DNA of 64,000 nt from Macrostomum lignano (lineage: Eukaryota), in assembly GCA_002269645.1 (NCBI GenBank), contig NIVC01000921.1:186001-250000 (forward strand), given 5' to 3'. Position 1 is the first letter of the stretch; each line of letters starts with the position of its first letter. Of this stretch, positions 9,469-56,785 are shown one piece after another. Position numbers and translations under genes: made by a program. A model generated the notes under the pieces. The model saw only the letters and a list, made by a program, of their open reading frames with translations, had not been told where the DNA came from and did not search any database.

Positions 9469-10361
9469 GTAGCAGGAAGAAGTAAGCAGTGACAAAGGCG
9501 TCGGAAAAAATAGCTAAATAAATTAATAACGACTGAAGACTACGTTGACATAAAATGTAATTTCTGAAACGCCAAGAAACAAATCAGTATTGAAGATTCG
9601 AGCGCATGACTCAATTTAAATAGGCTTTATTATTCCACATTCTAGTGCAGCAGACGAATGAGTAGTATGTATGGCGCAAAAAAAATCCTGAAGCTGCTAG
9701 AATGTAACAGACTTCAGTAGAGTGAGCAAAAATTATTGTTTTCTGTATCTTTTTGAGCAACTCCCACGGACCGGTAGTTATACTGTAAAAACGTAATTAC
9801 AAATTTCAACAGACTTATTGTAGGCAATCAATTAGCAAACTCTGGTTAAGTAAAAAATTCCGTAATGTCGTAAAAAATGGCTACACTACTTACAGTAGCC
9901 AAAATACGAGTATATCTGCGTGAAAGCACTGGAAAATTGGAAGATCAGCAATTAAACAAAATATGTTAAAATGTAGCACAAATGTAGTAGAATTGGCTGG
10001 CGTTGTGACCAAGCTGTACAAGGTGGGAGGTAATATTCTCTGCAGATATGCGGCCACCAACAAATAGTACGGTTTATCTAATCAACAAATTTATGCTAAA
10101 AAATTAATAGACTAAGCGTGCAGCGATGCAGTTATTAAATACTATTGGCGTCCACATTTCACAACTGCGTGCATTCAATAAAAAATTGCGGCACAAAAAT
10201 TACAAAGGACTGTTGCCTTGGATACTGGCAGCTGATTGACACTGCGGAGCTCTCAGATACTCCTTGTAGCTGATTGAACTAATATTTATACAGTAGATAG
10301 ATAGACAGTGGGTTTGATATGCCACCTGGCATATATCATAGGTATATATATGCAGACAGAC

Positions 10362-10443
10362 ACAGATACACAAACAGATAGACAAGAAGACAGACAGACA
10401 GACAGACAGACAGACACTAAGACAGACAGACAGACAGACACTA

Positions 10444-10496
<53 letters not shown>

Positions 10497-10635
10497 GGCA
10501 GACAGACAGACAGACAGACAGACAGGCAGACACTAAGACAGACAGACAGACAGACACTAAGAGACAGACAGACAGACAGACACTAAGAGACAGACAGACA
10601 CTAAGACAGACAGACAGACAGACAGGCAGACAGGC

Positions 10636-10676
<41 letters not shown>

Positions 10677-10707
10677 CTAAGACAGACAGACAGACAGGCA
10701 GACAGGC

Positions 10708-10756
<49 letters not shown>

Positions 10757-10759
10757 CTA

Positions 10760-10799
<40 letters not shown>

Positions 10800-10839
10800 G
10801 GAAAGACAGACACTAAGACAGACAGACAGACAGACACTA

Positions 10840-10880
<41 letters not shown>

Positions 10881-10920
10881 GGCAGACAGACAGACAGACA
10901 GACAGACAGGCAGACACTAG

Positions 10921-10988
<68 letters not shown>

Positions 10989-11061
10989 CTAAGAGACAGA
11001 CAGACACTAAGACAGACAGACAGACAGACAGACAGGCAGACAGACAGACAGACAGACAGGC

Positions 11062-11110
<49 letters not shown>

Positions 11111-11113
11111 GGC

Positions 11114-11146
<33 letters not shown>

Positions 11147-11149
11147 CTA

Positions 11150-11182
<33 letters not shown>

Positions 11183-11185
11183 GGC

Positions 11186-11254
<69 letters not shown>

Positions 11255-11265
11255 GGCAGACACTA

Positions 11266-11306
<41 letters not shown>

Positions 11307-11387
11307 CTAAGAGACAGACAGACACTAAGAGACAGACAGACACTAAGACAGACAGACAGACAGACAGACAGGAAGACAGACAGACAT

Positions 11388-11422
<35 letters not shown>

Positions 11423-11451
11423 CTAAGAGACAGACAGACAGACAGACACTA

Positions 11452-11510
<59 letters not shown>

Positions 11511-11513
11511 CTA

Positions 11514-11564
<51 letters not shown>

Positions 11565-11567
11565 CTA

Positions 11568-11610
<43 letters not shown>

Positions 11611-11636
11611 CTAAGAGACAGACAGACAGACACACA
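10362..11636. repeat. (GACA)n microsatellite with interspersed CTAA/GGCA variants
   Basis: Direct inspection; source of the RQTD/LSVC ORFs. Confidence 0.98.
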
Positions 11637-11787
11637 GGTATTTCAGCGCCTGCTTCAAGCCTCGGATCGCCGTGTTCCTACGAGTAAATTAGCAATCTAG
11701 AGTTGGCATTTCGAGCCCCAGCAGAGCAGGCAGTCAGCCGAATCCGAGATAGGCGCGATCAAAAACAGCAAAACAAAGGAAGTAAAA

Positions 11788-14700
11788 TCAGGCCGAGTCG
11801 CCAAGCAGCGCCGCGATGCCCTGGCAGCAGCCGATGGCCTGCATCGCCCGCACCAGCTGCTGACAGTGCAGCGGCTGCAGCAGCTGCAGTCCCTCATACA
11901 GTAGGCCTGCCGCGGGTTGCCCCCTGGCCTGGCCGCGTTCTAGCAGCTGACGCAGCTCGCCAGGCAGCATCTCCAGCAGCAGCAGCAGCGGCTCGAAGAC
12001 CGCCTGAACAGCCGGGCAGCAGCAGAGCCGGCCGAGCTGCTCCGGTGTGACCAGCTTGTCTGGCGAGATGGACAGCTTGGCCAGATTGACGGCCATACAT
12101 GCGCAACTGCTGGCCGACCTGGCCGATCCGGCCACCGTAAATCGTGGCTGACCAGGGGTAAGTCGCAAAATTGAGTCAACCAAAAACAGAAAAACACAAG
12201 AACCAAGAAAGGCAAGAGGAAAGCGAAAGAAAGAGCAGTTCAGGGAAAATCGTGAAGCAAAAGAAAAAAAATTCGCAAAAGAAGCAAACTAAGTTGTAAA
12301 AATAATCAGGTAAGTCGCAAAAAGGATCAGGTAAGTCGCAAAAGAAGCAAACTAAGTCGCAAAAGGATCAGGTAAGTCGCAAAAGGGTTAGGTAAGTCGC
12401 AAAAAGGATTAGGTAAGTCGCAAAAAGGATTAGGTAAGTCACAAAGGGTTAGGTAAGTCGCAAAAGGGTTAGGTAAGTCGCAAAAGGGTTAGGTAAGTCG
12501 CAAAAGGATCAGCTAAGTCGCAAAAAGGATTAGGTAAGTCGCAAAAAGGATTAGGTAAGTCACAAAAAGGATTAGGTAAGTCGCAAAAAGGATTAGGTAA
12601 GTCGCAAAAAGGATTAGGTAAGTCACAAAGGGTTAGGTAAGTCGCAAAAGGATTAAGTAAGTCGCAAAAAGGATTAGGTAAGTCGCAAAAAGGATTAGGT
12701 AAGTCACAAAGGGTTAGGTAAGTCGCAAAAAGGATTAGGTAAGTCGCAAAAAGGATTAAGTAAGTCGCAAAAGGGTTAGGTAAGTCGCAAAAGGATCAGC
12801 TAAGTCGAAAAAAGGATTAAGTAAGTCGCAAAAAGGATTAGGTAAGTCGCAAAAAGGATTAGGTAAGTCACAAAGGGTTAGGTAAGTCGCAAAAGGGTTA
12901 GGTAAGTCGCAAAAGGGTTAGGTAAGTCGCAAAAGGGTTAGGTAAGTCGCAAAAGGATCAGCTAAGTCGCAAAAAGGATTAGGTAAGTCGCAAAAAGGAT
13001 TAGGTAAGTCACAAAAAGGATTAGGTAAGTCGCAAAAAGGATTAGGTAAGTCGCAAAAAGGATTAGGTAAGTCACAAAGGGTTAGGTAAGTCGCAAAAGG
13101 ATTAAGTAAGTCGCAAAAAGGATTAGGTAAGTCGCAAAAAGGATTAGGTAAGTCACAAAGGGTTAGGTAAGTCGCAAAAAGGATTAGGTAAGTCGCAAAA
13201 AGGATTAAGTAAGTCGCAAAAGGGTTAGGTAAGTCGCAAAAGGATCAGCTAAGTCGAAAAAAGGATTAAGTAAGTCGCAAAAAGGATTAGGTAAGTCGCA
13301 AAAAGGATTAGGTAAGTCACAAAGGGTTAGGTAAGTCGCAAAAGGATTAAGTAAGTCGCAAAAAGGATTAAGTAAGTCGCAAAAAGGATTAGGTAAGTCG
13401 TAAAAGGGTTAGGTAAGTCGCAAAAGGATTATGTAAGTTGCAAAAAGGATTAAGTAAGTCGCAAAAAGGATTAGGTAAGTCGCAAAAAGAAGCAACTAAG
13501 TCGCAATAAGAGGGAAGTAAGTCACAATTAGAGGCAATCAGGGGGTAGTAGGTGCAAGTGTGGCAGGAGAGCAAAAACAGAATAGAAGCCTTCAACCACA
13601 GACAAGATCTTTGAAATCAGAAGCCCGCGTCAACATTTTCCCATTGATTTCCTAAACTCTGGAGCAGGGGTTGGCAAACTCCGGCTCGCGAAGCCCCTCT
13701 ATCTGGCCCTCGCCCCTCGGGTTCTTTGAAACTTCCTAACTACGAGTAGCAAGGTTGGTGTCTCTTCAACTCTCATCTCTCTCTTCTTCTCTACCTTGCC
13801 TCCCCTCTTCTCTCTCTCCCCCTTTTCCCTCTTCTCTCTCCTCTCATTTTTACTCTCCTCTCTTCTCCCCCTTTCTCTCTACTCTTTCTCCTCAATGCCC
13901 TCTTCTCTCCTCTTATCTTCAGCAAAAATATGTGCATATTTTCTTACTTCAAAGTAGAGGGAATAGAAGATTAGAGATAAGCAAACAGAGGAGAGGCGAG
14001 CGATGCGATGGGAGAAAAGATAGAAGAGGAGAGAAAAGCTGAGGGAGGAAAAAGAGATGAGAGAGAAGAGGAGATGAGAGGAAAGAGGAAAGAAAAGATG
14101 ATGGATGAGATCAGAAGAGAGGAAAGAGGAGAGAGTAGATGAGAGAAGAGAGGATAAAGAGGAGATGAGAGGAGAGATGAGAGAGTAGAAAAGAGAGGAG
14201 AGATAAGATGAGAGAGTAGAGTGGAGAGAGACGAGAGGGAAGATAAGATGAGAGAGTAGAGTGGAATGGAGAGAGACGAGAGGAGAGATAAGAATGTAGA
14301 GAGGAGACAGAAGAGATAGGAGAGGAGAGGAAAGAGAGAAGGGATAAGGGATGAGAGAGAAAAGAAAAAGAGGATGAGAAGATTGAGGAATGGAGAGAAT
14401 TTGCAAAGGCCTCAAATCTTAGTTTAACATGCATTACTCCCATCTTTGCCTTTTTCCTAACTGTTAACAAGTTTTTGTTTGAGCATGACTTCAAATTTAG
14501 AATCTATGCAAAAATAGTTCCGGGAATTAGAATTCAGTGGTTTAAAAATCTGTGGGTTTTCACAGCTTGTATCTCTACTGGATTCGTATTCTGCATCTGA
14601 TGAGCCATCTGAATCAGGGCTCTCATCTTCCATGCCAAATCGTCTAGCAAATCGTTCTTGAGCTATAGGTCACACTGTATTCACTTCACTTACTTCTGGA

Positions 14701-16892
14701 CATTCATGAATCATGACTTTTGTAGTATGCTCACTACACTGTACTGACAATTTACTAATTGCTTCATGCCGCCACTAGATGACACTGATTAGCTGTTATA
14801 AAAACGCGGAATCTGCACGCAGCACTAATTAGCTAGCGAGGCATTTAGCTTTAAAAATATGGTCATAGTTACTCTTGCCGTTTACCTAAAGTTTTTGCTT
14901 GGCTCTTTCATAGGTAAGTCGCATTTTTTATCGAAAACTAAGTCGCACGGCCAGCGTAATTTCAGAAGTTGCGCATGTATGTTGACGGCCGTCATGGAGG
15001 CCGGGCCCAAGTCGGTGGAGGAGAACTCGGGCTCCGCAGGCTCCGGGACAGGGACAATTGAGTCCGTCTCGGTTGTCTCAAGCTCCATCTTAAGCAGCTG
15101 ACTGACGGATTCCCCGGGCAGGCAGCCGTTCCAGGCTTCGATTGCCCGATCGAACGGCGGCCGATCTGTCACCACGTATTGGGCGACATTCGCCCAGCTG
15201 GACGCTTGAGTTGCCGCCGGCCAGCGAGCTCGGATTCGGTTGCTAAGCAGGCTGGTCAACTGTTTGGAGCTGAGCTGTCTTCGCGGACAGGCCAGAGTGA
15301 AGACTTCGAAGCAAGACAGCCCGTAGGCGAGTCGATCCTGATCCAAGCAGGCCGGCTGCGGTCCAATTACGCCTGAGTCAAAGCCGCCAATCTAGTAGGG
15401 GGCAAATAGGTAAACGGCGGGAGTAATTATGAACGAGTTGCCTCGTCAGCTAATAAGTTGCTTATTGATCTTGTTTATTGAATAAAAAGGGATCAACTAT
15501 GACCAAATTGCCTAAGCTTCCACCTCATTGTCTTGTAAGTTTTATCAGTTTATCTAACAAGCAGTTAACTATTCTTCACTTAGCAGAAATTCTCACGCCT
15601 TCTCACCTTGGCCTGCAGACTGGCTGTTATTAAAATGTTTCTGGAACTAAAACTGCCGTGACAAATTGGCGGCTTCTCAACGCTGTGCAGGTGATGAAAG
15701 CCTTCGGCAATTTGGCGCAGCCAGAGCGACAGCAGAAGCGGACTCACCGGCTGGCGCTGCGAAATGGGAACAAGTTTGATTGAGCAATACTGGCCACGAA
15801 ACAGATAATAAAACCCATCTTAGATTAAAGGTAAAGCATTTTATATAAAATTTGAAATCTCGATTAGGGATTTGACATCCCGATTAAGGATTTGACATCC
15901 CGATTAAGGATTTCACATCCCGATTAAGGATTTGACATCCCGATTGAGGATTTCACATCCCGATTGAGGATTCGACCTACCGATTGAGGATTTGACATTT
16001 CGATTGGGGGAGGGGGTTGACATCCCGATTGGGGATTTGACATCTCTATTGGGGATTTGACATCCCGATGGAGGATTCGACATCCCGATGGGGATTTGAC
16101 ATCTCGATTGGGGAATTGACATCTCGATTGGGGAATTGACATCTCGATTGGGGAATTGACATCTCGATTGGGGAATTGACATCTCGGTTGGGGAATTGAC
16201 ATCTCGATTGAGGAATTGACATCTCGATTGAGGATTTGACGATGGGGGATTTGAAATCCCCATTGAGGATTTGACATTTCTATTTTGGATTTGACAACGC
16301 GATCTCAGGTTTTCGGTGCCACAATCTAAAAGCTCACAATTGTACTGTTTAAAAGTACACTCACCCGATCTGACTGAGCCAGGCTGAACTCCAAAACATT
16401 GCCATGCTCACAGTGCTCCATCACAATGCCCATCAACATGACATTTTGCTCCATATAAAAAGCCACTGAGCTGAGGAGTGCTGAGTGGTTTGCTTTAATT
16501 TTTTTCAATATATTAAACTGATTACTTATCAGCTTAGTGGCCGTTGTGCTGCAATGTTAGCAAATTGGTTTTTTATTAGAAACAAAGAATCTGAAAAGTG
16601 GAAAAATCATAAAGCTGACAGAGTCTGAGCAAGTGTCATACATCTGTACGCTTGTAGAACTAGATGTAGGCTTCATTTTCTTCAAAAAGTAGCGCTGATC
16701 AGTGGAGTCTTCCTTCCATTTGCAGCAAGCATATGAGAAGTAGCCGCTATCTGAAATGTGTAAAAAATAAAAAGTTAAAATCAACAGATACATAGATAGA
16801 CAGGTAATTCTAAAAGAAAAAGGCATACCAATAGGTGCAGGCTCTAGATCACGAAGGTTATCTTGATTGACAGTAATTTTACTTGATAGCAT
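11788..16892 (-). CDS. Pseudokinase + C-terminal death-fold protein (RIPK1-like architecture), ~391 aa, last exon interrupted by a transposon: join(16829..16892,16650..16750,16365..16517,15607..15756,14982..15391,11788..12085)
   Basis: All exons are GT-AG bounded and in phase. Kinase subdomains in order: IDSGYFSYA (Gly loop), YFLKK (beta3 Lys), FNILKKIKANH, GIVMEHCEHGNV, WLRQIAEGFHHLH...PPICHGSFSSRNIL, AK|IGGFD, DRLAYGLSCFEVFT, DRPPFDRAI. Removing the insert plus one TSD joins MTAVN-LAKL in frame to a six-helix death-domain-like tail (VFEPLLLLLEM...PAAGLLYEGL...CQQLVRAMQAIGCCQGIAALL). The exon-2 donor position is less certain. Confidence 0.78.
12305..13505. repeat. ~21-bp subterminal tandem array (GGTAAGTCGCAAAAAGGATTA)n inside the transposon
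   Basis: About 55 units. The core TAAGTCGCA also occurs singly at 12157, 14915, 14939 and in related elements. Confidence 0.95.
13665..13730 (+). mobile_element. Fragment of a second hAT-type terminus (CAGGGGTTGGCAAACTCCGGCTCGCG)
   Basis: Resembles the common CAGGGGTNGGCAAACT...CGGCCCGCG TIR of hAT/Charlie-type MITEs; no partner end found. Confidence 0.45.
13760..14400. repeat. CT-rich then GA-rich low-complexity tracts
   Basis: Polypyrimidine tract 13760-13920 and polypurine tract 13980-14400. Confidence 0.85.
14815..14886 (-). pseudogene. Degenerate 28S rRNA-like fragment (region around the R2/I-PpoI site)
   Basis: GGTAAACGGCAAGAGTAACTATGACCATATTTTTAAAGCTAAATGCCTCGCTAGCTAATTAGTG compared with conserved 28S GGTAAACGGCGGGAGTAACTATGACTCTCTTAAGGTAGCCAAATGCCTCGTCATCTAATTAGTG. 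Confidence 0.75.
15409..15455 (+). pseudogene. Second degenerate 28S rRNA-like fragment, in a pseudokinase intron
   Basis: GGTAAACGGCGGGAGTAATTATGA...TGCCTCGTCAGCTAAT; the central CTCTCTTAAGGTAGCCAAA is replaced by ACGAGT. Confidence 0.7.
15858..16300. repeat. 20-bp minisatellite (GGGATTTGACATCCCGATTG)n
   Basis: Direct periodicity; lies in the intron between pseudokinase exons 3 and 4. Confidence 0.93.
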
Positions 16893-17125: not shown

Positions 17126-17297
17126 CATGCTTGGGCGCAAACTTGGGATTCACTCGGCCGTTTCTATTGGCAACACACACATGTAAGTCGCTATTGGACG
17201 GAAAAGTAGTCACGTGACTGGTATCAGCCAATAGCGACTTACATGTGTGTGTTGCCAATAGAAACGGCCGGGTGATTCCCAAAGTTGCGCATGCATG
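17126..17297. mobile_element. 172-bp hairpin MITE of the CATACATGCGCAAC family
   Basis: Arms of about 70 bp are inverted (GGGATTCACTCGGCCGTTTCTATTGGCAACACACACATGTAAGTCGCTATTGG / CCAATAGCGACTTAC...GTGATTCCC); 8-bp TSD ATTTTGCG at 17118-17125 and 17298-17305. Confidence 0.9.
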
Positions 17298-17329: not shown

Positions 17330-18420
17330 ACAATCGCTCTCTATGTACATCGTTGACTCAGTCCTAACTCGCATAAATAAAGCGAGCACTGCCTCACGGG
17401 GCCTATGCTGATTTTTGCACTGCCAAATAGCAAGTGTTACAAGTGGTAGCAGAGATCAGAATGACAAAGGGCAGCCACCGCGCGATTCTGAGAACTTTTA
17501 GGCTCTGGCAACTTTAATGAGTGGCTGCAGCGGTTTGAGCTGTGTGCAGCAGCCAACAAGTGGACAAACGACAAACACTTGCATCTGCCAACAATTCTGG
17601 ATGGCGAGGCTCTGGTAGTCTTCTTTGAGCTTGGCGACGAGGAAAAGAGCGACTACAGTCAAGTGTGACCAAAGCATTAACGCAGTGATTAACCGAGGCA
17701 TTTCTCACTTCTCAGCGCTGGAGGCATTCGAGATCCAGAAGCTGCTGCCTGGTGAACCTCCTCGGCTGTTTCTCTACCGCCTGAGGCAGCTGCTCAAGGA
17801 CGCTGAAATCAGCAACAAGAATGCCACGGACAGCATGCTGACCCATCACTTCATTCGCGGACTGCCGGCGGATGTCAGCACTGACGCGTCAGTCAAGACG
17901 CCTGCTACTGGAGGTGCTTTCTGCCACCACGGATGAAAGCCAATCAGCCTCTCGCAGCAGCAGCCAGAACTGCTTGCGGCAGTGCTGAGACTGCAGATTT
18001 GAGGGCTATGGTCAACTTGCTGCAGGCGACAGTCCAAGACCTGGCGGCGAAGCTAAGCTCAGAGGCTTCAGACTCCTGCGTGGTTCGCAGTGCGAGGAGA
18101 CAGCACGAGGTGACCTGCTGGAATGGCAACCACTGTGGCCACATTGCCAGGAACTGCAAGCAGCCATTGGGAAATGGCACTGACCAGGGTGGAGCCCACA
18201 ACCCTGGCCAGTTCTGAGCACAGGGCCCAGCATGAGTGGATTGTTTTGGGGTGCATAGGGGGGCAGGCTGGACAGTGCTTGAGCAGCGCAGCAACTTATT
18301 CTGCATTTGCTGCAACTTTGGCAGCTAGCCGGTCCACTAGTCACATACAAACCAGCTGCACTAATGGTTAGCAGACACCAAGCAGCTCTGCTAGCAGCAA
18401 GTAGCCTACCAAGTTGCACC
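17330..18420 (+). mobile_element. Ty3/Gypsy-type LTR retrotransposon remnant (LTR end, PBS, decayed gag)
   Basis: ...TGTTACA (17441), then AG, then TGGTAGCAGAG (17444-17454, complement of the tRNA-iMet 3' end). Downstream: GNFNEWLQRFELCAAANKW...LPTILDGEAL (gag N-terminus) and a degenerate knuckle CWNGNHCGHIARNC; stops and frameshifts present. Confidence 0.8.
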
Positions 18421-18486: not shown

Positions 18487-18604
18487 AGTAAGTCGCTATT
18501 GGACAGAATAGTAGTCATGTGACTGCTCTCAGCCAATAGCGACTTACATGTGTGTGTGTTGCCAATAGAAACGACTGAGTGATTCCCAAGGTTGCGCATG
18601 TATG
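18487..18604. mobile_element. 5'-truncated copy of the 172-bp MITE
   Basis: GTAAGTCGCTATTGG...CCAATAGCGACTTACATGTGTG...GTGATTCCCAAGGTTGCGCATGTATG matches 17185-17297. Confidence 0.85.
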
Positions 18605-18989: not shown

Positions 18990-21900
18990 TCCTCCACGAG
19001 TCCACGGGGTCAAGTCGGAGAGCCGCGCTTAACTGCTGCGGCGGCCAACAGCGGCAGGACCAAGCGGGGGGCAGCGGAGCGCCCGCCGGCGTGTTGAGCG
19101 TCGACGTGAGCTTAATCGGCGAGGTCGGCTGCGTGGCGCCGCCCGCCAAGCCGCCGCCGCACTGGTCCCATCGGATCTTCTGGGTGGCGCCAGGGACCGT
19201 GAGGCCCAACTTCATCGGGCCCCAGCTGTACCACAGGGAGTACTTCGGGTCGGGACGTTCAACTGCCGGACCCTGAAAGATTCCTGGTGGAGAGGGCAGC
19301 TAGCGAAGCTAGCACTCGACCTCAGCTGCGACGGCAGGAGGTATCCATCAAGGCTGACCCGGGAATTCACTCTGAGGACCTGGGTGCTGGCTGGACCTTC
19401 TGGTACACCTCAGCTAACCACCGTGGCCGAGGAGGAGTAGGGGCGCTGATCGGGCCGAGGCTGCAGCAGAGCTGCTGCTGCGTCTCTCTGTCTGACCGGC
19501 TGCTTCGTGTCGATGTCCGGCTTCGCGGCTGGAACGCCCGCCTGTTCTGCGCGTACGCACCGCCCGCCACCCGCCCAGATGAAGCTCAGACCTTCTTTGA
19601 CTTCCTTTCGGAGCAGGTTGAAGCGACGGCACAGCGCGACACGGTGATCGTGCTCGGCGATCTCAACGCTGTGCCGCGCCGCTCCGAGCGGTCGCTCTGT
19701 CACACCACGCGAGAACGGCAACACTGGAGCGCTGGACGACTTCCTGGCCAGGCACGATCTGGTGTCAGTCAACAGCCGCTTCCGCCGGCCGCCTAGCAGG
19801 CTCGCCACCTTTGAGGGCTGCCAGCGCCGGCGACGGAACGCGCGGGGTCGGTTCGCCACGCGGAGGCTAGCACAGCGGGACCACGTGCTTGTGCGCTTTC
19901 GCGAGCGCGGCCGCGCCATCAACTGCCGCATCATCACGCCGCTGGCTCTACGCTCCGACCACCGGCTTGTCATCTGCGACCTTCATGTCCGGGACCCTCT
20001 GTACCGGCCGCCAAAGCGACTGCAGCGGCGCTACTAACGTGCGCTCAAGAACACCAAGACGCGCCGCCGCTTTGCAAACGCCTTCTGCACTGAGCTGGAG
20101 GGCGCGCGTAGCTCCGCCGAGTATGCAGCAGTCAGCGCAGCTGTCCGCACCGCCGCGGAGCAGTCGGTACCGCTGATGCGGCCAACACAGCGGGGACAAC
20201 CAGCCTGGATGGAGGATGAGGAGGTTAGACAGGCGGCAGACAACATGAAACGCATCCGGCTGAATGGCCAGCCTGCGCACGAGGCGGAGGAGGCTCTGGC
20301 GCGTGTCTACCAAGAGCAGGAGCTCGCCGCTGTCGACGACGCCATCCGAGCCGTCTCTGCTGCGGGCCCCGACGCAAGGGGCCGTGTGGCCTGGGCCACC
20401 ATCAATACCCCGACGGGACGCAAGCGGCGTGCAGCACTAAACCTGGCAGGCGACACCTCGAACGAACGCAGGAACAGCTTGCGCACGTTCTTCGCCGCCA
20501 TCGTCAACGCGCCGCCACCGACCACACTTACCAGCCGATCTGCATTTGCCGCCCGAAATACCTGTGCCAACGGCGGAGCAGTTCAACACCAGCCCAGTCA
20601 CCACTGCCGACGTTTTGAAACTTGTCTTTAATACCCCAGGCGGAAAGGCACTGGGGCCAGACGAGGTGCCAATCGAGGCGCTGCGCATCCATTGCGTGGC
20701 CACTGAGGTCACCCGTGTGATAAACGGCGTGCTCGCTGGAGGTCCGGCGCCCACTGAGTGGACCCTAGCGCACATCGTCGGCATCCCAAAGAAGCCAGGC
20801 ACAACCAAACTGGAGGAGCACCGAGGTATCTGCCTAATGTCCATCGCCGCAAAGCTTTTCAACCGGCTTCTGCTCGCCCGGCTGCAGCCCATGCTAGATC
20901 CTTACCTGCGGATCGAGCAGAACGGGTTTCGGCCAAGGCGCGGCACCGTCACGCAGATACTGGCCCTTCAGCGAGTCATCGAGGAGGCGCGCACGCGCCA
21001 GTCGAACCTGATCGTGGTATTTGTTGACTTCAAAAAGGCCTTCGACTCGGTCGCCAGAAGCGCGTTTTCCGCTGGTGCTTAGAGCGTACAACGTACCGCA
21101 GCAACTGGTCAATGCCACGATGGCGCTGTACCAAAACACCAGAGCTGCGGTGGTGACCCCAGACGGTCTCTCGGACACCTTCGATACGTCATCCGGAGTA
21201 CTCCAGAGGGACACGCTGGCGCCATTTCTGTTTGTACTGGTGCTGGACTGGGTGCTGCAGACTGCTTTGCCCACGGCCGAGGACGGCTTACTCCTGCAGC
21301 GCCGTGTGGGTCGCCGCCAACCAGAGCGCCGCCTCAGCATCTTAGGCTACGCCGACGACCTCGCCCTGCTGTCATCAACTGTCGAAGGCGCCCAACATCA
21401 GCTGGACCGGCTGGTTGGCGTTGCTGCGAGCGTCGGCCTGGTGGTCAACACGCAGAAGACCGTCGTGCTCACCACGCCATCCGACATCCAAGCCGACATC
21501 TGCTGAGGTGCCAATGGGCAGGCGATGCCGCTGCCACGCTGTCAGCAGTTTGTGTACCTTGGTGGTCTGGTGCCCGATGCCTCCGACGACCTGAGGCGTC
21601 GCCGCGGACTCGCCTGGGCAGCCTTCAACTTTGTGAGGACCGTCCTACACTCTGCGGCCCTGCCAGACCACCAGCGTTCGGCGCTGTTCCAGGCGGTGAT
21701 TGAGACCATCCTGCTTTACAACGCCAAGACATGGACGCTGACTAAGACACTTGAGCAGCAGGTGGATGTGGCCCACGCCGGCCTGCTGTGCACCACCTTT
21801 AAGATTGGCGGTGGCGAGCACATCTCCAATGCGGCGCTGTATGCCTGAGCCCACCTTGCCTACCCCAGCGACCTGCTTTGACGCCATCAGCTCTAGCTGG

Positions 21901-46000: not shown

Positions 46001-48372
46001 AGAAAAATATGTTCTTCGCTAATATCACATCTTTCTAATATATCACATCACACCACATTACTTATTTGCGAGCGGCAAGGCTACATGCAGTTTGTGCTTT
46101 ACTCGTAAAAACGGCTTTGATTTCGCAAATATTTCCTTTTGCATAACACTGAATGTGATTTCAGCTGCGGAAATTTCAAAAAATTTGACTGCTATTGATA
46201 ATTCCTGATCGGCTAGAAAAAACGTCACAGATAGAATGGATAACGTGTACATGTACATGTATCTTGCACTTATATGCACATACGTGCATCTCACATGTAT
46301 TACATGTATTATATTACATGTATCAAGAAGTTTGGTACATGTATATTTTGGAGAGATGTCAGAATGTCAGAATCAGTATTTATCGATCAGTACCCTTTGA
46401 AAAAATGCATGTACATGTAGCTCACACTGTACCTGTGCAAAGTTGCCGCAGTGCGCGAGAGTAAACTATATTTGCATTTAAAAATCGGAGGCAAAAGATC
46501 AAATGTGTGAAAAATGCTGTAATTTGTGTATTATAGTGCCTGAAATTCAGAAATGAATTAAAAGCGCGAGAATGAGTGAGTGAGAGAGAAAGCGAGAATA
46601 TAGGAGTGAGGGTGAGAGAGTGAGTGAGTGAGTGAGTGAGAGAGAGTGAGTGAGAGAGAAAGCGAGAATATAGGAGTGAGGGTGAGAGAGTGAGTGAGTG
46701 AGTGAGAGAGTGAGTGAGTGAGTGAGAGAGAGTGAGAGAGAGAGAAAGCGAGAATATAGGAGTGAGGGTGAGAGTGAGTGAGTGAGAGAGAGAGAAAGAG
46801 AGAGAGTGAGTGAGTGAGTGAGTGAGAGAGTGAGTGAGTGAGTGAGTGAGAGAGTGAGTGAGTGAGTGAGTGAGTGAGTGAGTGAGTAAGTGAGTGAGTG
46901 AGAGAGAGTGAGTGAGAGAGAAAGCGAGAATATAGGAGTGAGGGTGAGAGAGTGAGTGAGTGAGAGAGAGAGAAAGAGAGAGAGTGAGTGAGTGAGTGAG
47001 TGAGTGAGTGAGTGAGAGAGTGAGTGAGTGAGTGAGTGAGTGAGTGAGTGAGTAAGTGAGTGAGTGAGAGAGAGTGAGTGAGAGAGAAAGCGAGAATATA
47101 GGAGTGAGGGTGAGAGAGTGAGTGAGTGAGAGAGAGAGAAAGAGAGAGAGTGAGTGAGTGAGTGAGTGAGAGATCTCCTAACCCCCGGATCCATATATTC
47201 TCTCAAATTACATGTGCATGTACATTTACTCTCATCCCCTCCCTTTGCTTTCACCAAAATTCTCGCTTTGAGTACACAATAAAATACACACAATAATGCT
47301 CGTACATTTACACAGACATTCTCATAGGCATTGGGCCTAAGATGCGCTTTTTCTGTTATGTGAGTGAACGATAGTGGTTAACTTGCTTTCGTCAAAGTAC
47401 ATGTAAACCTTCGTCAAAATGAATGGCACCTCTAAATCCACGTACCATAGCACAATATCAAGCCGCTAGATTTGTTTGTCCGTAATAATGCACTAGACGC
47501 ACCCAGACGCCGAATATACACTCAAATAATCGTGCGAGCTCGTAAAAAAACTTTTCAAATTACAGCAACTTGCAATTGAACTTTTGAGAGGCTTTTTGAA
47601 AGTGAAGTTAAAATTAATTACTCAAGCTTTTGCCCTCAAAAGCATTATTCATGCTCATCCACTGCTAAAAGTAACAAATTGTGCTTTTGTTAAAGATATT
47701 TTTAAAATTGCCCTTGTTGACTTGCAATCGTTTTGGGCCACTTAATTATTCATCTTATTCCTGACCAATCTTGGGACGCTTCTTCCTCATCTAACTCCAC
47801 AACCCATCACAACCAATAGCAATGCTGGAAGATTGGTAGCTCCCCCTCAATTCCAGTAGCCAGTAAGAGCTGTGGCGGTCTTGGTGTGTGGCGGTCTTGG
47901 TCATGCGCCAAGTAGCTAACAAGGCATTCTGACTTAATGAGACAGTCATAGTTATTCCTGCTGTTTACCCAAAGTTGCGTTAATTTTGCTTTAGGGTTTT
48001 TTTACATGTAAGTCGCATTTTTGGCCAAAAACTAAGTCGCATAGCTGACCAAATTTTGGAGGTTGCACATGTATGCCTTTAAAGAAAATTTAAATCCCTA
48101 GAATTAAGGATTAAGATAGGGTTAGGATGATAAAGGCTAAATTTAAGATGAATGTTTTCACTTTTAATGTGAGGCAAGCTTTCAAAACCCTAGAATCAGG
48201 GACTCAAGCAATAAAGACAAGAATGTTTAATACTATACTAGTATCTGCAACTAGTAAATATTTATATTATCAATTTATGCAAAAACAATTAAAAACATCT
48301 TTTTGAAATTTAAACTTACCTTGTCTACAGTCAATCCAGTATACGGTACAAATGGTGACAACAAATAACTAC
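34029..48372 (-). CDS. MBOAT1/2 (oysgedart)-like lysophospholipid acyltransferase: join(48320..48372,40906..41054,40653..40823,39799..39990,39576..39708,38901..39024,38166..38264,36036..36142,35746..35946,35420..35571,34029..34155); start exon not identified
   Basis: Exons are in phase with GT-AG ends. Motifs: [14 protein letters not shown]|[20 protein letters not shown]|[29 protein letters not shown]...[42 protein letters not shown] (catalytic Asn/His). Confidence 0.92.
34198..34585. repeat. 31-bp minisatellite (CACCGTTCACCGATCCCCATGTCACTGGGCA)n
   Basis: Period 31; last MBOAT intron. Confidence 0.95.
34590..35414. repeat. 27-bp minisatellite (CACAGAATTCACCAGTGTCACTAGATA)n
   Basis: Period 27; begins right after the donor at 35419. 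Confidence 0.96.
36200..38050. repeat. ~26-bp minisatellite (GATTTCCTTGTGATGATTTCTGTGGT)n
   Basis: MBOAT intron; source of the [10 protein letters not shown] ORFs. Confidence 0.96.
38480..38865. repeat. 16-bp minisatellite (ATCCCCAACCTTCACA/C)n
   Basis: MBOAT intron. Confidence 0.93.
39230..39510. repeat. 20-bp degenerate minisatellite (TATGAGGATGATGCCGTTGC)n
   Basis: MBOAT intron. Confidence 0.85.
40040..40500. repeat. 33-bp array (TTTTCCGGGGTGGTTGTGTCAGAGAGGGGCGAC) grading into a shorter GTGGTTGTGTCAGGGTT-type array
   Basis: MBOAT intron; both halves share the core GTGGTTGTGTCAG. Confidence 0.9.
43677..44023 (+). pseudogene. MULE transposase C-terminal exon fragment
   Basis: TTTCAG acceptor, then [21 protein letters not shown] (RTNNxxExWH motif downstream of the MULE DDE core); no upstream DDE exon seen. 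Confidence 0.8.
44163..44375. repeat. 69-bp tandem repeat, 3 copies
   Basis: ATGCC at 44166, 44235, 44304. Confidence 0.95.
46570..47172. repeat. (GAGT)/(GA)n array with a recurring AAAGCGAGAATATAGGAGTGAGG higher-order unit
   Basis: Inside the MULE; a short inverted counterpart lies at 42975-43080. Confidence 0.92.
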
Positions 48373-51528: not shown

Positions 51529-54500
51529 CTGTTGTTGTTGTTGTTGTTAGTTGGCCCAAACGCGCCCAGGATCCATGCAGAACCTGGCCAGCGCGACCAA
51601 ACCATCAGGGTAATCGGACAAGTTGCTGAGGGAGAGCGGAGCTCCAATGAAGCGACGGCGGGCGGCCTCGAGAGCAGGGCACGCTGTCCAGTGCTCAAGG
51701 GTGTCTGGTTCGAGGAAGCACCTTTGGCACGTCGGATCCACCGTGGGGTCCATGAGGGCGCGGAAGGCTCCGAAGAGGCTGGAGTGGCCGGAGCGCAGCC
51801 GGGCAAGAAGGACAGCGTCTTTGCGGTTAGTAATAAGCCGACGTTCCTTTTCGGCGTCGGCGGAGGCATAGGTGAGACGAGATCTCGCGTGGGTGACCGG
51901 CTTGTCAACCAGAGTGCGGCGGATCACCGAGGCGGCAGTGGGAAAACTGATGCTGGGGCGCGGTGCTTCATCGGCGTTGGCGGCAGCGGAGTTAGCAGCG
52001 CGGTCCGCGAGTTCATTGCCCGGAATGCCGACATGACCCGGGACCCACAGGAGAGCGCGGCAGTTGTGCGGGAAGCGGAGGGAAGAGGCCAGGCGGCTGA
52101 AGGGACGCTGAAGGGCGCGCAGAAGAGACTGACTGTCAGAGCAGATGATGGCAGGGCGCGTGGGGTGCGAGCGGAGGTAGTCGAGGGCTAGGACCAGAGC
52201 GCGGAGTTCCTCTTCAAAGGAGCTGGTGTAGCGGCTGCCAGCGGACGTGCGGGCTTCCACGGTCGTCGGGACTGCCGGGTCTCCGATGGTGACCACAGCG
52301 GCCGCCCCGCCAGCCTCGGAGCCGCCGGCCGCCGAACCATCGCAGTAAATGACGAGCTCAGCCGGGTGAGACCGGATGACGTCGAGAGCGGCAAGACAGC
52401 GCTCCAACGGGGGCGTGGTGGCCGGAGGCAAAGGATTGTCAGCTAGGATCGCCGGAAGATGTTGGTCCAGCCAGGGGCATGGGAAGGCCGGTGTGAGCGG
52501 CAGACGCGGCGTGAGATCAATGCCAAGGCCATTGGCAAGCTGAGCCGAGCGGAGTCTCCAGCTACTGCGGGCGAGCCGGTGTTGCACGGTGCCCGAGAGG
52601 GCGATGGCGCGAGGATGGTCGTTGGGCAGCCTGAGCGCGCGTTCCCTGGCGATGAGGCAAAGGCGGTCGCTGGTGTTCCTGTAGCTGCCGATGCCGGCCT
52701 CCAGGTGCACAGCGTCAAGCGGCGCCGAGCGGTGCAAGCCCGTGACGATTCTGAGGGCCTGGTTTTGCGCGCGCTCAAGGCGCTCGAAGGAGGTGCTGGA
52801 AAGCCAAGGTTGCCAAGCCGGGGCCGCGTAGTTAAGAAGGCTCTGCTGCATAGCCAGGTAGACGCCGCGAAGGCGCTCCTTGCGCCAACCCCAGTCCCGA
52901 GCCGCGAGGCAGGACAGCATGCGGCAGCGGGACAGGACTCTGCTGCAGATGTCGTTGACGTGCGCGTTAAAGCTGAGCGTACGGTCCAGGGTAATGCCTA
53001 GGAGTCTAGGAGTGCTGCAGTGCCGAACTTGGGAATGCCCGATGAAGAGCGAGGGGCTCCAGCTCGCTTCGCTGGGGTCGGTAGAAAAGAAGGCGATTTC
53101 ACTCTTGTCAGCGTTGAGCACCATCTTGTTGGAGGAGCTCCAGGCGGTAACAGCGTTGAGGGCGGCCTGAAGGCGGGAGGCGGCCGTGAGCTTGTTGCGG
53201 TGCCTGCATCTGAGAGAGATGTCGTCAGCGTATAACGTGATGCCAACATCCTCAGGGATAACGGAGACGACAGGGTCAATGAAAAGCGTGAATAGCAGCG
53301 GTCCCAAGACGGATCCCTGCGGAAGGCCTTGGCGCATCGGCTTGGACTTGCTGAGGGACCCGTTGAAGGAAACCCGAGCGCGGCGGTCGCTGAGGAAGGA
53401 CGAAATCCAGCGAATGTAAGCAAGCGGGACACCTTTATCAGCGAGGATGGTGATAAGCTTCTCGCGCCACACTTTGTCGAACGCCTTAGAGTAGTCCAGG
53501 AGGGCGAGAATGGTCCTTTCGGCCGGTTTGAGTTGGAAGCCGTCGCTAATGTCCTGCACAACTCTGAGTAACAGGTCCTCGCACGAGTACATCGCACGGA
53601 AGCCAGCCTGGGCCGGCGAGATCCAGCCACGAGAGTTGGCGAGGTGTCTCAGTCTGGTGTCGATGATTCGCTCCAGAAGTTTAACGGCACAGGAGGTGAG
53701 GCTCACTGGGCGGAAACTGGAGATCTCTCTGGCCGACTTGCCGGCTTTAAGAAGCGGGATGATAATGGCGCAACGCCAGATGTGGCCCAGGGATCCGGTG
53801 TGCAGCGACATGTTGAAGATAAACAGCAACTCTAAGAGGGCTGCGTCCCCCAGGTGTTGCAACATGCGCGGGGAAATGTCGTCCGGGCCGGCGGCGCCGT
53901 TAGTCTTCTGATGAGCAATCGCTCCGCGAAGCTCCTCCATGGTGATGGGTGGGGTCTCCGCGGTAGCCGGCGCGTTGCTCCGCAGAATGGCTTTGGCGCG
54001 CCTGACGACCGCCCGGTCGTCACTGTCGATCTTGAGGCGACAGACAGAAGCATAGTGGCTGGCGAAGGCGTTGGCTTTGCTGCGGTTGTCAGTGAGAGAG
54101 CGTTCACCCACGAGCAGAGCCTCGTTGGGCGCGGAGGAGCCCGGGGAGCCGCTGAGGGACCTGATCAGTTTCCACGCCTGGCTCGAATCATGGCTGTGGT
54201 GCAGGTCGGCGAGGTATTCCTTCCAGGCAGAGTCTTTGGCGTCGCGGGTGAGCCGGGAAGCTTCGATGCAAGCGTCGAGCCACTCTTGACGCCTATGATG
54301 CACTTCGTGCCGGAGGCGGTTGCGGCGCTTGATGGCAGCTTTAGCTTCTTGGGTAAGCCAGGGCTTGGATTGTCTCTTAAGCCGGATTTTGCCTATGTGT
54401 TTGTGCGCCTGCTCCAGGATGATCTGATTGAAGCGAAGGATGCGTTTGTGAACCGACAGGCGGGACTTAGGGAGGTTGCGGAAGGCTTCCTCGGTGGCGG

Positions 54501-56592: not shown

Positions 56593-56713
56593 GCTTGCTG
56601 TGTCGCTTGTAAATGATAGAGTTTGGCGATTGATTCGCTTTGCTTGAGATTGCTTTGCTTGCGGTTGCTTTGTGTGCTCGAATCCTGCCTCACTCTCGGA
56701 TCCAGCTGTCTCG

Positions 56714-56785
56714 CTTTTATAGACTGGCACTGAGGAAGCTTCTCGAATTTTCTTGCCCACTGACTCATTCTGGAAATTTCTAGAA
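56714..56785 (-). promoter_or_regulatory. Heat-shock promoter: TATA box + two 4-unit HSEs + AP-1-like site
   Basis: TATAAAA at 56721-56715 (-); GAAgcTTCtcGAAttTTC at 56735-56752; TTCtgGAAatTTCtaGAA at 56768-56785; TGACTCA at 56761-56767. Confidence 0.9.

What the first reader, a model, noticed from the sequence alone, without database searches (positions are those of the whole stretch)
11788..16892. Unannotated-looking pseudokinase with MLKL-like catalytic substitutions and a C-terminal death fold
Seen: this gene is invisible as a whole in the ORF track and was rebuilt from five in-phase exons. HRD is replaced by HGS (CHGSFSSRNIL), DFG by GFD (KIGGFD), the beta3 Lys is kept, the activation segment is very short, and a death-domain-like six-helix tail follows. 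Known: human MLKL has HGK...SSN and GFE at these positions, while RIPK1 has kinase + C-terminal death domain. Inference: a catalytically dead RIPK-like adaptor of a cell-death or innate-immune pathway in an invertebrate. No N-terminal four-helix bundle is visible.
Basis: partly seen in the sequence, partly recalled or inferred. Interest (0 to 1): 0.75.

Follow-up and report, generated by a model that had tools for sequence, protein, structure and literature searches.

The report
Transposon-split orphan flatworm pseudokinase gene
This is a real but already annotated gene of the flatworm Macrostomum lignano for a catalytically dead kinase found only in this species; this copy is cut by a transposon, its likeness to the cell-death protein MLKL rests on two short motifs, and the proposed death domain could not be confirmed.

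Summary
The window is Macrostomum lignano contig NIVC01000921.1. The finding's coordinates match GenBank gene BOX15_Mlig006697g1 ("hypothetical protein, partial", PAA74822.1).

**Confirmed**
- The motifs HGS for HRD, GFD for DFG, a kept beta3 Lys, Gln for the alphaC Glu and a degenerate Gly-loop.
- Only 13 residues between GFD and alphaF.
- So this is a clear TKL/TK-type pseudokinase (Pfam E 3e-13; AF2 pLDDT above 85 for residues 11-180).

**Changed**
- The gene has five exons with four GT-AG introns.
- The 2.9-kb gap before the tail is not an intron. It is a 2,888-bp hAT-like non-autonomous transposon in exon 5, with a 19-nt TIR and an 8-bp duplication GCCGTCAA.
- A near-identical paralog (NIVC01000677.1, PAA78578.1) has the empty site.
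- This copy therefore reads through to a stop and loses the tail.

**MLKL and death fold**
- MLKL pseudokinase domains are the best PDB sequence hits (E 6e-6), but only by a few bits.
- Masking 13 motif residues removes that lead.
- HG and GFx also recur among the nearest TKL relatives.
- There is no four-helix bundle and no RHIM.
- The 98-aa Leu/Gln/Ala-rich tail has no Pfam or PDB match and no confident model, so the death fold is unverified.
- No ortholog turned up among 1.84 billion representative proteins.

Interest is modest.

The parts
16829..16892 (-). Exon 1 (ATG at 16892; MLSSKITVNQDNLRDLEPAPI, then phase-1 donor GTATGC)
   Evidence: Matches P0001/P0004. An in-frame TGA lies two codons upstream.
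16642..16750 (-). Exon 2: degenerate Gly-loop DSGYFSYA and beta3 strand RYFLKK (K45)
   Evidence: The intron before it is 78 nt, GT..AG.
16365..16548 (-). Exon 3: alphaC (Glu replaced by Gln in NQFNILKK), beta4, beta5 and hinge
15607..15756 (-). Exon 4: alphaE and catalytic loop CHGSFSSRN (HRD to HGS)
14982..15391 (-). Exon 5, proximal part: IGGFD (DFG to GFD), 13-residue activation segment, alphaF to alphaI, linker up to ...SMTAVN
   Evidence: It is contiguous with the distal part in paralog L002 at 11524-12231.
12094..14981 (.). 2,888-bp insertion: hAT-like non-autonomous DNA transposon inside exon 5. It holds a 21-bp satellite (12310-13510) and AG-rich low-complexity sequence.
   Evidence: 19-nt TIR CATACATGCGCAACT(T/G)CTG at 12094-12112 and 14963-14981, 18/19 matching. 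Empty site in L002. Tandem repeats. Related termini elsewhere in the window.
12086..12093 (.). Target-site duplication, copy 1 (GCCGTCAA on the minus strand)
   Evidence: The paralog has a single copy.
14982..14989 (.). Target-site duplication, copy 2 (GCCGTCAA on the minus strand)
14882..14884 (-). Stop codon reached when exon 5 is read through into the transposon. It adds IHAQLLKLRWPCDLVFDKKCDLPMKEPSKNFR and gives a 337-aa product without the tail.
   Evidence: The same read-through peptide begins in UniProt A0A1I8HF26 (P0005).
11788..12085 (-). Exon 5, distal part: 98-aa Leu/Gln/Ala/Cys-rich helical tail (LAKLSISPDK...ALLGDSA) plus stop. Detached from the ORF in this copy.
   Evidence: GC 0.68, GC3 0.8-0.9. 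No family or structure match.

Best explanation
**What it is**
The locus is one of at least two near-identical copies of a Macrostomum lignano gene. So far the gene is seen only in this species. It encodes a 404-aa pseudokinase of the TKL/TK type followed by a linker and a 98-aa helical, Leu/Gln/Ala-rich tail of unknown fold.

**Why it cannot be a kinase (shown)**
- The catalytic Asp is Ser.
- The Mg-binding Asp is Gly.
- The alphaC Glu is Gln.
- The Gly-loop is degenerate.
- About 25 residues of the activation segment and APE region are missing.

**How it most likely works (inferred)**
If it functions at all, it does so as a binding or scaffold module. The well-kept N-lobe and catalytic-loop face, and perhaps the tail, would serve as interaction surfaces.

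**State of this copy (shown)**
A 2,888-bp hAT-like non-autonomous DNA transposon has inserted into exon 5 between Asn305 and Leu306. Translation therefore runs 32 codons into the element and stops. This copy can only make a tail-less 337-aa product. The intact protein comes from the paralog on NIVC01000677.1.

**Why GenBank shows an intact protein here (inferred)**
The GenBank model bridges the transposon. The annotation pipeline mapped de novo transcripts with BLAT at >=80% identity, so a transcript from the intact copy also fits this locus with the element as a gap.

**Relation to MLKL (likely)**
The HG.../GF(D/E) resemblance to MLKL is most likely parallel degeneration on a non-RD TKL background, not orthology.
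For: **Identity of the locus**
- Window 1788-26889 is 100% identical to NIVC01000921.1.
- The protein is PAA74822.1.

**Kinase fold and dead motifs**
- Pfam E 3.3e-13.
- PDB alignments.
- AF2 with 30 sequences gives pLDDT 78-96 for residues 11-180.
- Foldseek finds 1,956 kinase chains at E<=0.001.
- Motif positions come, and the alignment with relatives.

**Transposon**
- Inverted repeat and 8-bp duplication.
- Empty site ...ATGACGGCCGTCAATCTGG... in L002.
- Gene span is 5,102 bp here against 2,231 bp in the paralog, a difference of 2,871.
- No GT-AG is possible at any offset within the duplication (sequence shown).
- The same terminal sequence occurs at 17283-17296 and 18590-18603, where 0.01 matches are expected by chance.
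- The read-through peptide is present in an independent older assembly (P0005).

**Recent duplicates**
- 5 differences in 1,215 CDS nt and 1 in 994 intron nt.
- This fits the 180 Mb of >=95% identical duplicated blocks reported for this assembly (PMC5730564).

**Orphan status**
- Only M. lignano entries are close.
- The next best hits, at <=70 bits, are multi-kinase proteins of Mastigamoeba, Tulasnella and plants.
- No hit covers residues beyond about 260.

**MLKL-likeness is motif-driven**
-.
Against: - MLKL is still the single best-scoring solved relative with the native sequence.
- One MLKL chain stays third after masking, so distant kinship with the MLKL pseudokinase domain is not excluded.
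- Both AF2 runs place six helices in the last 80 residues. That is what a death-fold domain would show, so the tail may be a real folded domain.
- No RNA-seq reads were examined here. Expression of either copy, and the fate of the transposon-bearing transcript, are inferred from the annotation method only.
- No transposase was found, and superfamily assignment rests on TSD length and the TIR alone.
Confidence: 0.75

Rival explanations
1. One reading: a RIPK/MLKL-related dead adaptor whose C-terminal tail is a death-fold domain. The tail would recruit it into a cell-death or innate-immune complex.
For: - MLKL pseudokinase domains are the best PDB sequence hits (E 6e-6), with HG..SS.N and GF(D/E) aligned.
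- RIPK2 is the top structural match.
- Six helices are predicted in an ~80-residue C-terminal segment in two AF2 runs.
- The pattern L..QLVRAMQAIG....IAALL looks like the last helices of death domains. This is my own reading and was not tested.
Against: - The MLKL lead disappears when 13 motif residues are masked.
- HG and GFx recur among unrelated TKL neighbours.
- Foldseek E-values do not separate RIPK2 from JAK3, EGFR and others.
- There is no Death/CARD/DED/PYRIN hit even at E<=10, and no death-fold chain among PDB sequence hits at E<=10.
- Tail pLDDT is mostly below 50.
- There is no RHIM and no four-helix bundle.
- MLKL has been reported in protostomes only from bdelloid rotifers (PMC11476962).
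- The tail is compositionally biased: Leu 23%, entropy 3.61 against 4.13 bits for the kinase part.
Confidence: 0.1
2. A decaying or functionless young gene. It would be a degenerate duplicate of a TKL kinase that is transcribed and keeps an ORF by youth alone. Its tail would be a translated GC- and CTG/CAG-rich stretch rather than a domain.
For: - No orthologue in 1.84 billion representatives.
- The activation segment is deleted, and AF2 confidence in the C-lobe is low (residues 182-222 and 252-344 below 50).
- The isolated C-lobe gives no Pfam hit.
- GC rises from 0.38 to 0.73 along the CDS.
- The tail region is open in several frames on both strands.
- One copy tolerates a disrupting transposon.
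Against: - The 404-codon ORF with four canonical introns is intact in the paralog, and apart from the insertion it is intact here.
- The N-lobe and catalytic core model with very high confidence.
- The gene model comes from a transcriptome-based annotation.
- GC3 of 0.8-0.9 in the tail suggests codon structure.
- The copies are too alike for any test of selection, so nothing here argues strongly against this reading either.
Confidence: 0.15
3. The 2.9-kb interval is a genuine, unusually bounded intron. It is spliced out, so this copy makes the full 404-aa protein as the GenBank model implies.
For: The GenBank CDS of this very locus joins ...SMTAVN to LAKLS... across the interval.
Against: - No GT-AG, GC-AG or AT-AC pair fits at any offset in the duplicated 8 bp.
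- The interval has a terminal inverted repeat and a target-site duplication, and it is exactly absent from the paralog.
- The annotation pipeline placed transcripts by BLAT with loose identity, which explains the model.
- An older assembly's model reads through into the element (P0005).
Confidence: 0.03

Closest known systems
MLKL pseudokinase domain (vertebrate necroptosis effector)
   Same: - Best PDB sequence hits (E 6e-6 to 6e-5).
- The HRD Arg is replaced by Gly.
- SS.N is kept in the catalytic loop.
- DFG is replaced by G-F-acidic.
- The beta3 Lys is kept.

   Different: - No N-terminal four-helix bundle or brace.
- The activation segment is cut to 13 residues, so no RIPK3-type phosphosites are possible.
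- A C-terminal tail that MLKL lacks.
- The similarity outside the two motifs is no better than to other TKL kinases.
- MLKL is not reported from flatworms (PMC11476962).
Plant NFR5/NFP-type LysM receptor pseudokinases
   Same: - TKL-group pseudokinases with a degenerate Gly-loop.
- HG(N/S) stands at the HRD position.
- N/G-F-S/D stands at the DFG position.
- The activation segment is shortened.
- NFR5 is the second-best PDB hit after motif masking, and its alignment runs through to alphaF.
- The LYK-like hit P0042 reads VHGNINSSN / IGNFS.
   Different: - Those are receptor kinases with LysM ectodomains and a transmembrane helix.
- This protein has neither.
- The likeness is convergent loss in an unrelated lineage.
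Non-RD TKL kinases with an H-G-D catalytic loop (IRAK1/Pelle type, from my own knowledge, and many fungal and amoebozoan TKL kinases)
   Same: The ...PPIxHGD(L/I)KxxNIL... context matches EKPPICHGSFSSRNILI. Of the 130 nearest proteins, 34 have HGD.
   Different: - Those keep the catalytic Asp and DFG and are active or activatable.
- IRAK and Pelle carry an N-terminal death domain, and there is no room for one here (21 residues).
RIPK1 (kinase + RHIM + C-terminal death domain)
   Same: The order kinase domain, linker, C-terminal helical region. RIPK2 and RIPK3 appear among weak sequence hits and top structural hits.
   Different: - RIPK1 is an active kinase.
- No RHIM is found here.
- The death domain is not detectable.
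hAT-superfamily non-autonomous DNA transposons
   Same: - 8-bp target-site duplication.
- Short terminal inverted repeat beginning CA.
- Subterminal repeated motif (GCGACTTA) in opposite orientation at the two ends.
- Exact empty site in a paralog.

   Different: - No transposase ORF was found inside. One 70-aa ORF was tested, with no Pfam hit.
- P elements also make 8-bp duplications, so the superfamily call is provisional.

Membership tests
Protein kinase-like fold (Pfam PK_Tyr_Ser-Thr / Pkinase) | Significant match to the kinase-domain profile and a bilobal kinase fold | tested here: met
   - PF07714 E 3.3e-13 (50 bits, cutoff 23.1) and PF00069 E 1.7e-9.
- AF2 pLDDT 78-96 for residues 11-180.
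- Foldseek probability 1.00 to about 2,000 kinase chains.
Pseudokinase (sequence definition) | Loss of at least one of: beta3 Lys, HRD Asp, DFG Asp | tested here: met
   HRD Asp is Ser154 and DFG Asp is Gly172. The beta3 Lys45 is kept. The alphaC Glu is Gln and the Gly-loop is degenerate.
MLKL | N-terminal four-helix bundle (killer domain) plus brace before the pseudokinase domain | tested here: not met
   - Only 21 residues precede the kinase domain.
- An in-frame stop lies two codons above the ATG.
- No gene is called in the 10 kb upstream.
MLKL | Pseudokinase domain closer to MLKL than to other TKL kinases | tested here: inconclusive
   - MLKL is the top PDB hit at 28.8 bits, against 27.0 for RTKC8 and 24.4 for ZAK.
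- With 13 motif residues masked, MLKL is third at 18.5 bits, and the human and mouse chains drop out.
- No phylogeny could be built for lack of orthologues.
MLKL | Activation loop carrying the sites phosphorylated by RIPK3 | tested here: not met
   Only 13 residues (SGVIGPQPACLDQ) lie between GFD and alphaF.
RIPK1-like | RHIM core ([IV]Q[IVLC]G) in the intermediate region | tested here: not met
   A pattern search of the 404-aa protein gave no match.
RIPK1-like / death-fold superfamily | C-terminal domain that matches a Death/CARD/DED/PYRIN profile or folds as a six-helix Greek-key bundle | tested here: inconclusive
   - Profiles: nothing at E<=10.
- PDB sequences: only SAMTOR noise at E 0.1.
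- AF2: six helices at 319-398, but pLDDT is 29-66, so no usable fold.
- No homologues exist to deepen the alignment.
IRAK/Pelle | N-terminal death domain before the kinase domain | tested here: not met
   The N-terminal extension is 21 residues.
hAT-like DNA transposon (insertion 12094-14981) | 8-bp target-site duplication flanking terminal inverted repeats, with an empty site elsewhere | tested here: met
   - TSD GCCGTCAA appears twice.
- The TIR is 19 nt with 18/19 matching.
- The paralog has the empty site.
hAT-like DNA transposon (insertion 12094-14981) | hAT transposase (or clear derivation from an autonomous hAT element) | tested here: not met
   The interior is a 21-bp satellite plus AG-rich low-complexity sequence. 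The one plausible ORF (14460-14669) has no Pfam hit. It is therefore treated as non-autonomous, and its superfamily as provisional.

The most novel reading that the evidence does not exclude
The protein is a true distant relative of the MLKL/RIPK pseudokinase lineage in a flatworm. Instead of an N-terminal killer bundle, it would carry a very divergent C-terminal death-fold domain. That would be a new architecture for a cell-death or immune adaptor in a phylum where no MLKL or RIPK1-type protein is recorded.
Probability: 0.07. Interest if true: 0.7.

Novelty: new member of a known kind. Interest (0 to 1): 0.3.

Why it matters
**As it stands**
- The result corrects an over-reading. The gene is a species-restricted TKL-type pseudokinase that GenBank already lists as a hypothetical protein.
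- The window copy is a transposon-disrupted duplicate.

**Practical points**
- The GenBank CDS for this locus bridges a transposon and should not be taken as this copy's product.
- The pair of loci gives a cleanly dated, recent DNA-transposon insertion with its empty site. That is useful for describing active DNA transposons in the neopolyploid M. lignano genome.
- The recurrence of HG.../GFx in unrelated TKL pseudokinases (MLKL, NFR5, this protein) is a small but concrete example of parallel degeneration of the same catalytic positions.

**If the tail is a death fold**
If the tail were ever shown to be a death fold, the protein would become interesting for the evolution of cell-death signalling in Spiralia.

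Tried and rejected
1. **Tail-only word-index search.** It found nothing, but it also failed to return the parent protein, which local phmmer finds at 193 bits. That negative result is uninformative.
2. **Full-length word-index search at E<=10.** It again returned only the three M. lignano clusters, so no deeper alignment was available for the tail.
3. **AF2 with the three M. lignano sequences.** Mean pLDDT was 29.7, which is unusable. The second run, with 28 distant kinases added, rescued the kinase core but not the tail.
4. **Foldseek of the whole model.** It confirms a kinase fold but does not discriminate between families. The tail could not be searched on its own.
5. **P0003 as a divergent paralog for a selection test.** It matches the locus in alternating reading frames. 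It is best explained as a frameshifted model from the older, indel-prone assembly, and I rejected it as independent evidence.
6. **dN/dS between the two copies.** This is impossible because they differ at only 5 of 1,215 CDS positions and 1 of 994 intron positions.
7. **Extra exons inside the 2.9-kb interval.** The ORF at 14460-14669 has no family hit, and the paralog lacks the whole interval.
8. **Literature search for the two gene identifiers.** No papers were found.
9. I did not do this. With a single-sequence query it would add little beyond the Pfam models, and remembered sequences are not a test.

Full report
**Where the window comes from**

The best is GenBank PAA74822.1, 'hypothetical protein BOX15_Mlig006697g1, partial'. 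Its contig is NIVC01000921.1 of assembly GCA_002269645.1. That contig is 100% identical to window 1788-26889 over 25,102 bases. The annotated gene span is window 16889-11788, which is the finding's interval. So the gene is already annotated, as a hypothetical protein with a kinase domain.

**Gene structure**

On the minus strand the CDS pieces are:
- 16892-16829
- 16750-16642
- 16548-16365
- 15756-15607
- 15391-14982
- 12085-11788

Joined, they give 1,215 nt and 404 aa. Without the Met this is identical to PAA74822.1. The four short introns (78, 93, 608 and 215 nt) all have GT..AG ends.

**The 2.9-kb gap is a transposon, not an intron**

- It is bounded by a 19-nt inverted repeat, CATACATGCGCAACT(T/G)CTG, at 12094-12112 and 14963-14981.
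- It is flanked by a perfect 8-bp direct duplication, GCCGTCAA, at 12086-12093 and 14982-14989.
- No GT-AG pair fits at any offset.
- A second copy of the gene lies on contig NIVC01000677.1 (PAA78578.1, locus L002). It spans 2,231 bp instead of 5,102 bp.
- That copy has one GCCGTCAA and a continuous 708-nt last exon...ATGACGGCCGTCAATCTGGCC....
- The same terminal sequence occurs twice more in the window, where 0.01 matches are expected by chance. Those sites share further terminal similarity. A 72%-identical end fragment lies at 47910-48075.
- The interior is a 21-bp satellite (58 copies) plus AG-rich low-complexity sequence. No coding potential was detected.

An 8-bp duplication, short TIRs and subterminal repeats point to a hAT-like non-autonomous DNA transposon of 2,888 bp inserted in exon 5. 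The superfamily assignment is provisional.

**Consequence for this copy**

Reading exon 5 through the insertion adds 32 residues (IHAQLLKLRWPCDLVFDKKCDLPMKEPSKNFR) and stops at 14884-14882. This copy can therefore encode only a 337-aa protein without the tail.

A UniProt model from the older ML2 assembly (A0A1I8HF26) ends in ...SMTAVNIHAQLLKLRW. So the insertion is not an artefact of one assembly.

The GenBank CDS nevertheless bridges the element. The Mlig_3_7 annotation was built by mapping a de novo transcriptome with BLAT (minId 0.8, near-best 1%) together with RNA-seq assemblies (PMC5730564). A transcript from the intact copy would therefore be laid on this locus too, with the element as a gap. 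This step is inference.

The two copies differ at 5 of 1,215 CDS positions and 1 of 994 intron positions. That fits the 180 Mb of >=95% identical duplicated blocks in this genome. It also means no test of selection is possible from them.

**The pseudokinase**

- Pfam PK_Tyr_Ser-Thr matches at E 3.3e-13, but only from the N-lobe to the catalytic loop.
- With 28 distant kinases added to the alignment, AlphaFold2 models residues 11-180 at pLDDT 78-96.
- Foldseek finds about 2,000 kinase chains.
- Alignments and motif positions show the following:
  - the beta3 Lys45 is kept;
  - the alphaC Glu is Gln;
  - the Gly-loop is DSGYFSYA;
  - the catalytic loop is CHGSFSSRN, so the catalytic Asp is Ser;
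  - DFG is GFD, so the metal-binding Asp is Gly;
  - only 13 residues lie between GFD and the alphaF Asp, with no APE motif.
The protein cannot be a phosphotransferase by the usual mechanism.
- The C-lobe after GFD is modelled poorly (residues 182-222 below 50). On its own it gives no Pfam hit.

**Is it MLKL-like or RIPK-like?**

By sequence, the best solved relatives are MLKL pseudokinase domains (28.8 bits, E 6e-6). They are followed closely by a choanoflagellate RTK, NFR5, ZAK, RIPK2 and FERONIA. I ran three tests, and all weaken a specific link.

1. **Motif masking.** I masked the nine catalytic-loop residues and the four GGFD residues. MLKL dropped to 18.5 bits, behind RTKC8 and NFR5, and the human and mouse MLKL chains vanished from the list.
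2. **Nearest relatives.** Among the 130 proteins that HMMER finds in 1.84 billion representatives, the HRD position reads HRD in 39, HGD in 34 and HGN in 8. G-F-(S/G/D) replaces DFG in about 17, three of them the gene's own copies. So HG and GFx are common states in non-RD TKL kinases and their dead relatives.
3. **Structure search.** RIPK2, JAK3, TYK2, Roco4, EGFR, MLKL, TNNI3K and IRAK4 all fall in one narrow band.

The other defining parts are also missing.
- There is no four-helix bundle. Only 21 N-terminal residues precede the kinase domain, and an in-frame stop lies upstream.
- There is no RHIM.
- No neighbour among 66 scanned proteins carries a Death or MLKL N-terminal domain.
- MLKL has been reported in protostomes only from bdelloid rotifers (PMC11476962).

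I therefore file the protein as an orphan TKL/TK-type pseudokinase, not as an MLKL or RIPK family member.

**The tail**

- Residues 306-404 are Leu 23%, with Ala and Gln 11% each and six Cys.
- The tail is encoded by GC-rich, CTG/CAG-rich DNA (GC 0.68, GC3 0.8-0.9) that is open in several frames on both strands.
- Pfam gives nothing at E<=10.
- PDB sequences give only an E 0.1 noise hit.
- No protein in the 1.84-billion library matches beyond about residue 260, apart from the gene's own copies.
- Both AF2 runs draw six helices between 319 and 398. pLDDT there is 29-66 and mostly below 50, so no fold can be assigned.
- The death-fold idea is thus neither confirmed nor excluded. On the present evidence I give it about one chance in ten.

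**Most likely function**

*Shown:* the protein is a dead kinase fold with a well-preserved N-lobe and catalytic-loop face, a gutted activation segment, and a helical tail.

*Inferred:* if functional, it acts by binding, as a scaffold, decoy or allosteric partner of an active TKL kinase, as other pseudokinases do. The tail would be a second interaction surface.

A serious alternative is a young, decaying duplicate without function. No orthologue was found, the C-lobe is degenerate, and one copy already carries a disrupting transposon.

**Verdict**

- The sequence observation is largely right.
- The gene model needs the transposon correction.
- The interpretation as an MLKL/RIPK-like death-fold adaptor is not supported by any test that could be run.
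- Interest is modest. The one thing that could raise it is an orthologue set that allows the tail to be modelled.

Noticed in passing
window 51547-56760 (-): Intact 1,737-aa ORF of a non-LTR retrotransposon (endonuclease/exonuclease/phosphatase + reverse transcriptase + RNase H). Its N-terminal region also matches the HSP20/alpha-crystallin domain (aa 107-190, E 4e-8) and, weakly, a C1 domain. An HSP20-like module in a LINE ORF is unusual.
   Followed up: no
window 17283-17296 and 18590-18603 (-), 47910-48075: Further termini of the same transposon TIR family (ATACATGCGCAAC). The first two share about 100 nt of subterminal similarity with each other, and the third is a 72%-identical end fragment. 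The family seems multi-copy, and possibly recently active.
   Followed up: partly
window 12310-13510: Inside the transposon, a 21-bp unit GTAAGTCGCAAAAAGGATTAA is repeated about 58 times, with higher-order periods of 245 and 449 bp. Its core GTAAGTCGC is the subterminal motif found in opposite orientation at both ends of the element. This looks like a satellite array grown from a transposase-binding-type subterminal repeat.
   Followed up: partly
window 10353-11637 and 15850-16296: A 1.3-kb (CAGA)n microsatellite lies directly 3' of the gene. A 20-bp minisatellite (22 copies) sits in intron 3 and differs by exactly one unit (20 nt) between the two gene copies.
   Followed up: no
window <=5745 (-); L002 15030-22231: An MFS_1 transporter gene lies downstream of the pseudokinase gene in both copies. 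The duplication is therefore segmental or whole-chromosome rather than a single-gene event.
   Followed up: no
UniProt A0A1I8HF26 (P0005), older ML2 assembly: This model has the transposon read-through peptide but the Ala17 variant of the intact paralog. The window copy has Pro17. That hints at a third copy or haplotype, or at recombination between copies.
   Followed up: no
window 17625-18217 (+), 20546-21082 (+): A gag-like ORF with a degenerate zinc-knuckle-like motif (CWNGNHCGHIARNC) has no Pfam hit. Upstream of the gene there is also a reverse-transcriptase fragment (RVT_1, E 4e-12). The 10 kb upstream is transposon debris with no called gene.
   Followed up: partly
GenBank CDS of BOX15_Mlig006697g1 (window 16889-11788): The deposited CDS joins two exon halves across a transposon with non-canonical 'intron' ends. 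This is probably a side effect of BLAT-based transcript placement on near-identical duplicates. Other gene models in this assembly may hide disrupted copies in the same way.
   Followed up: partly
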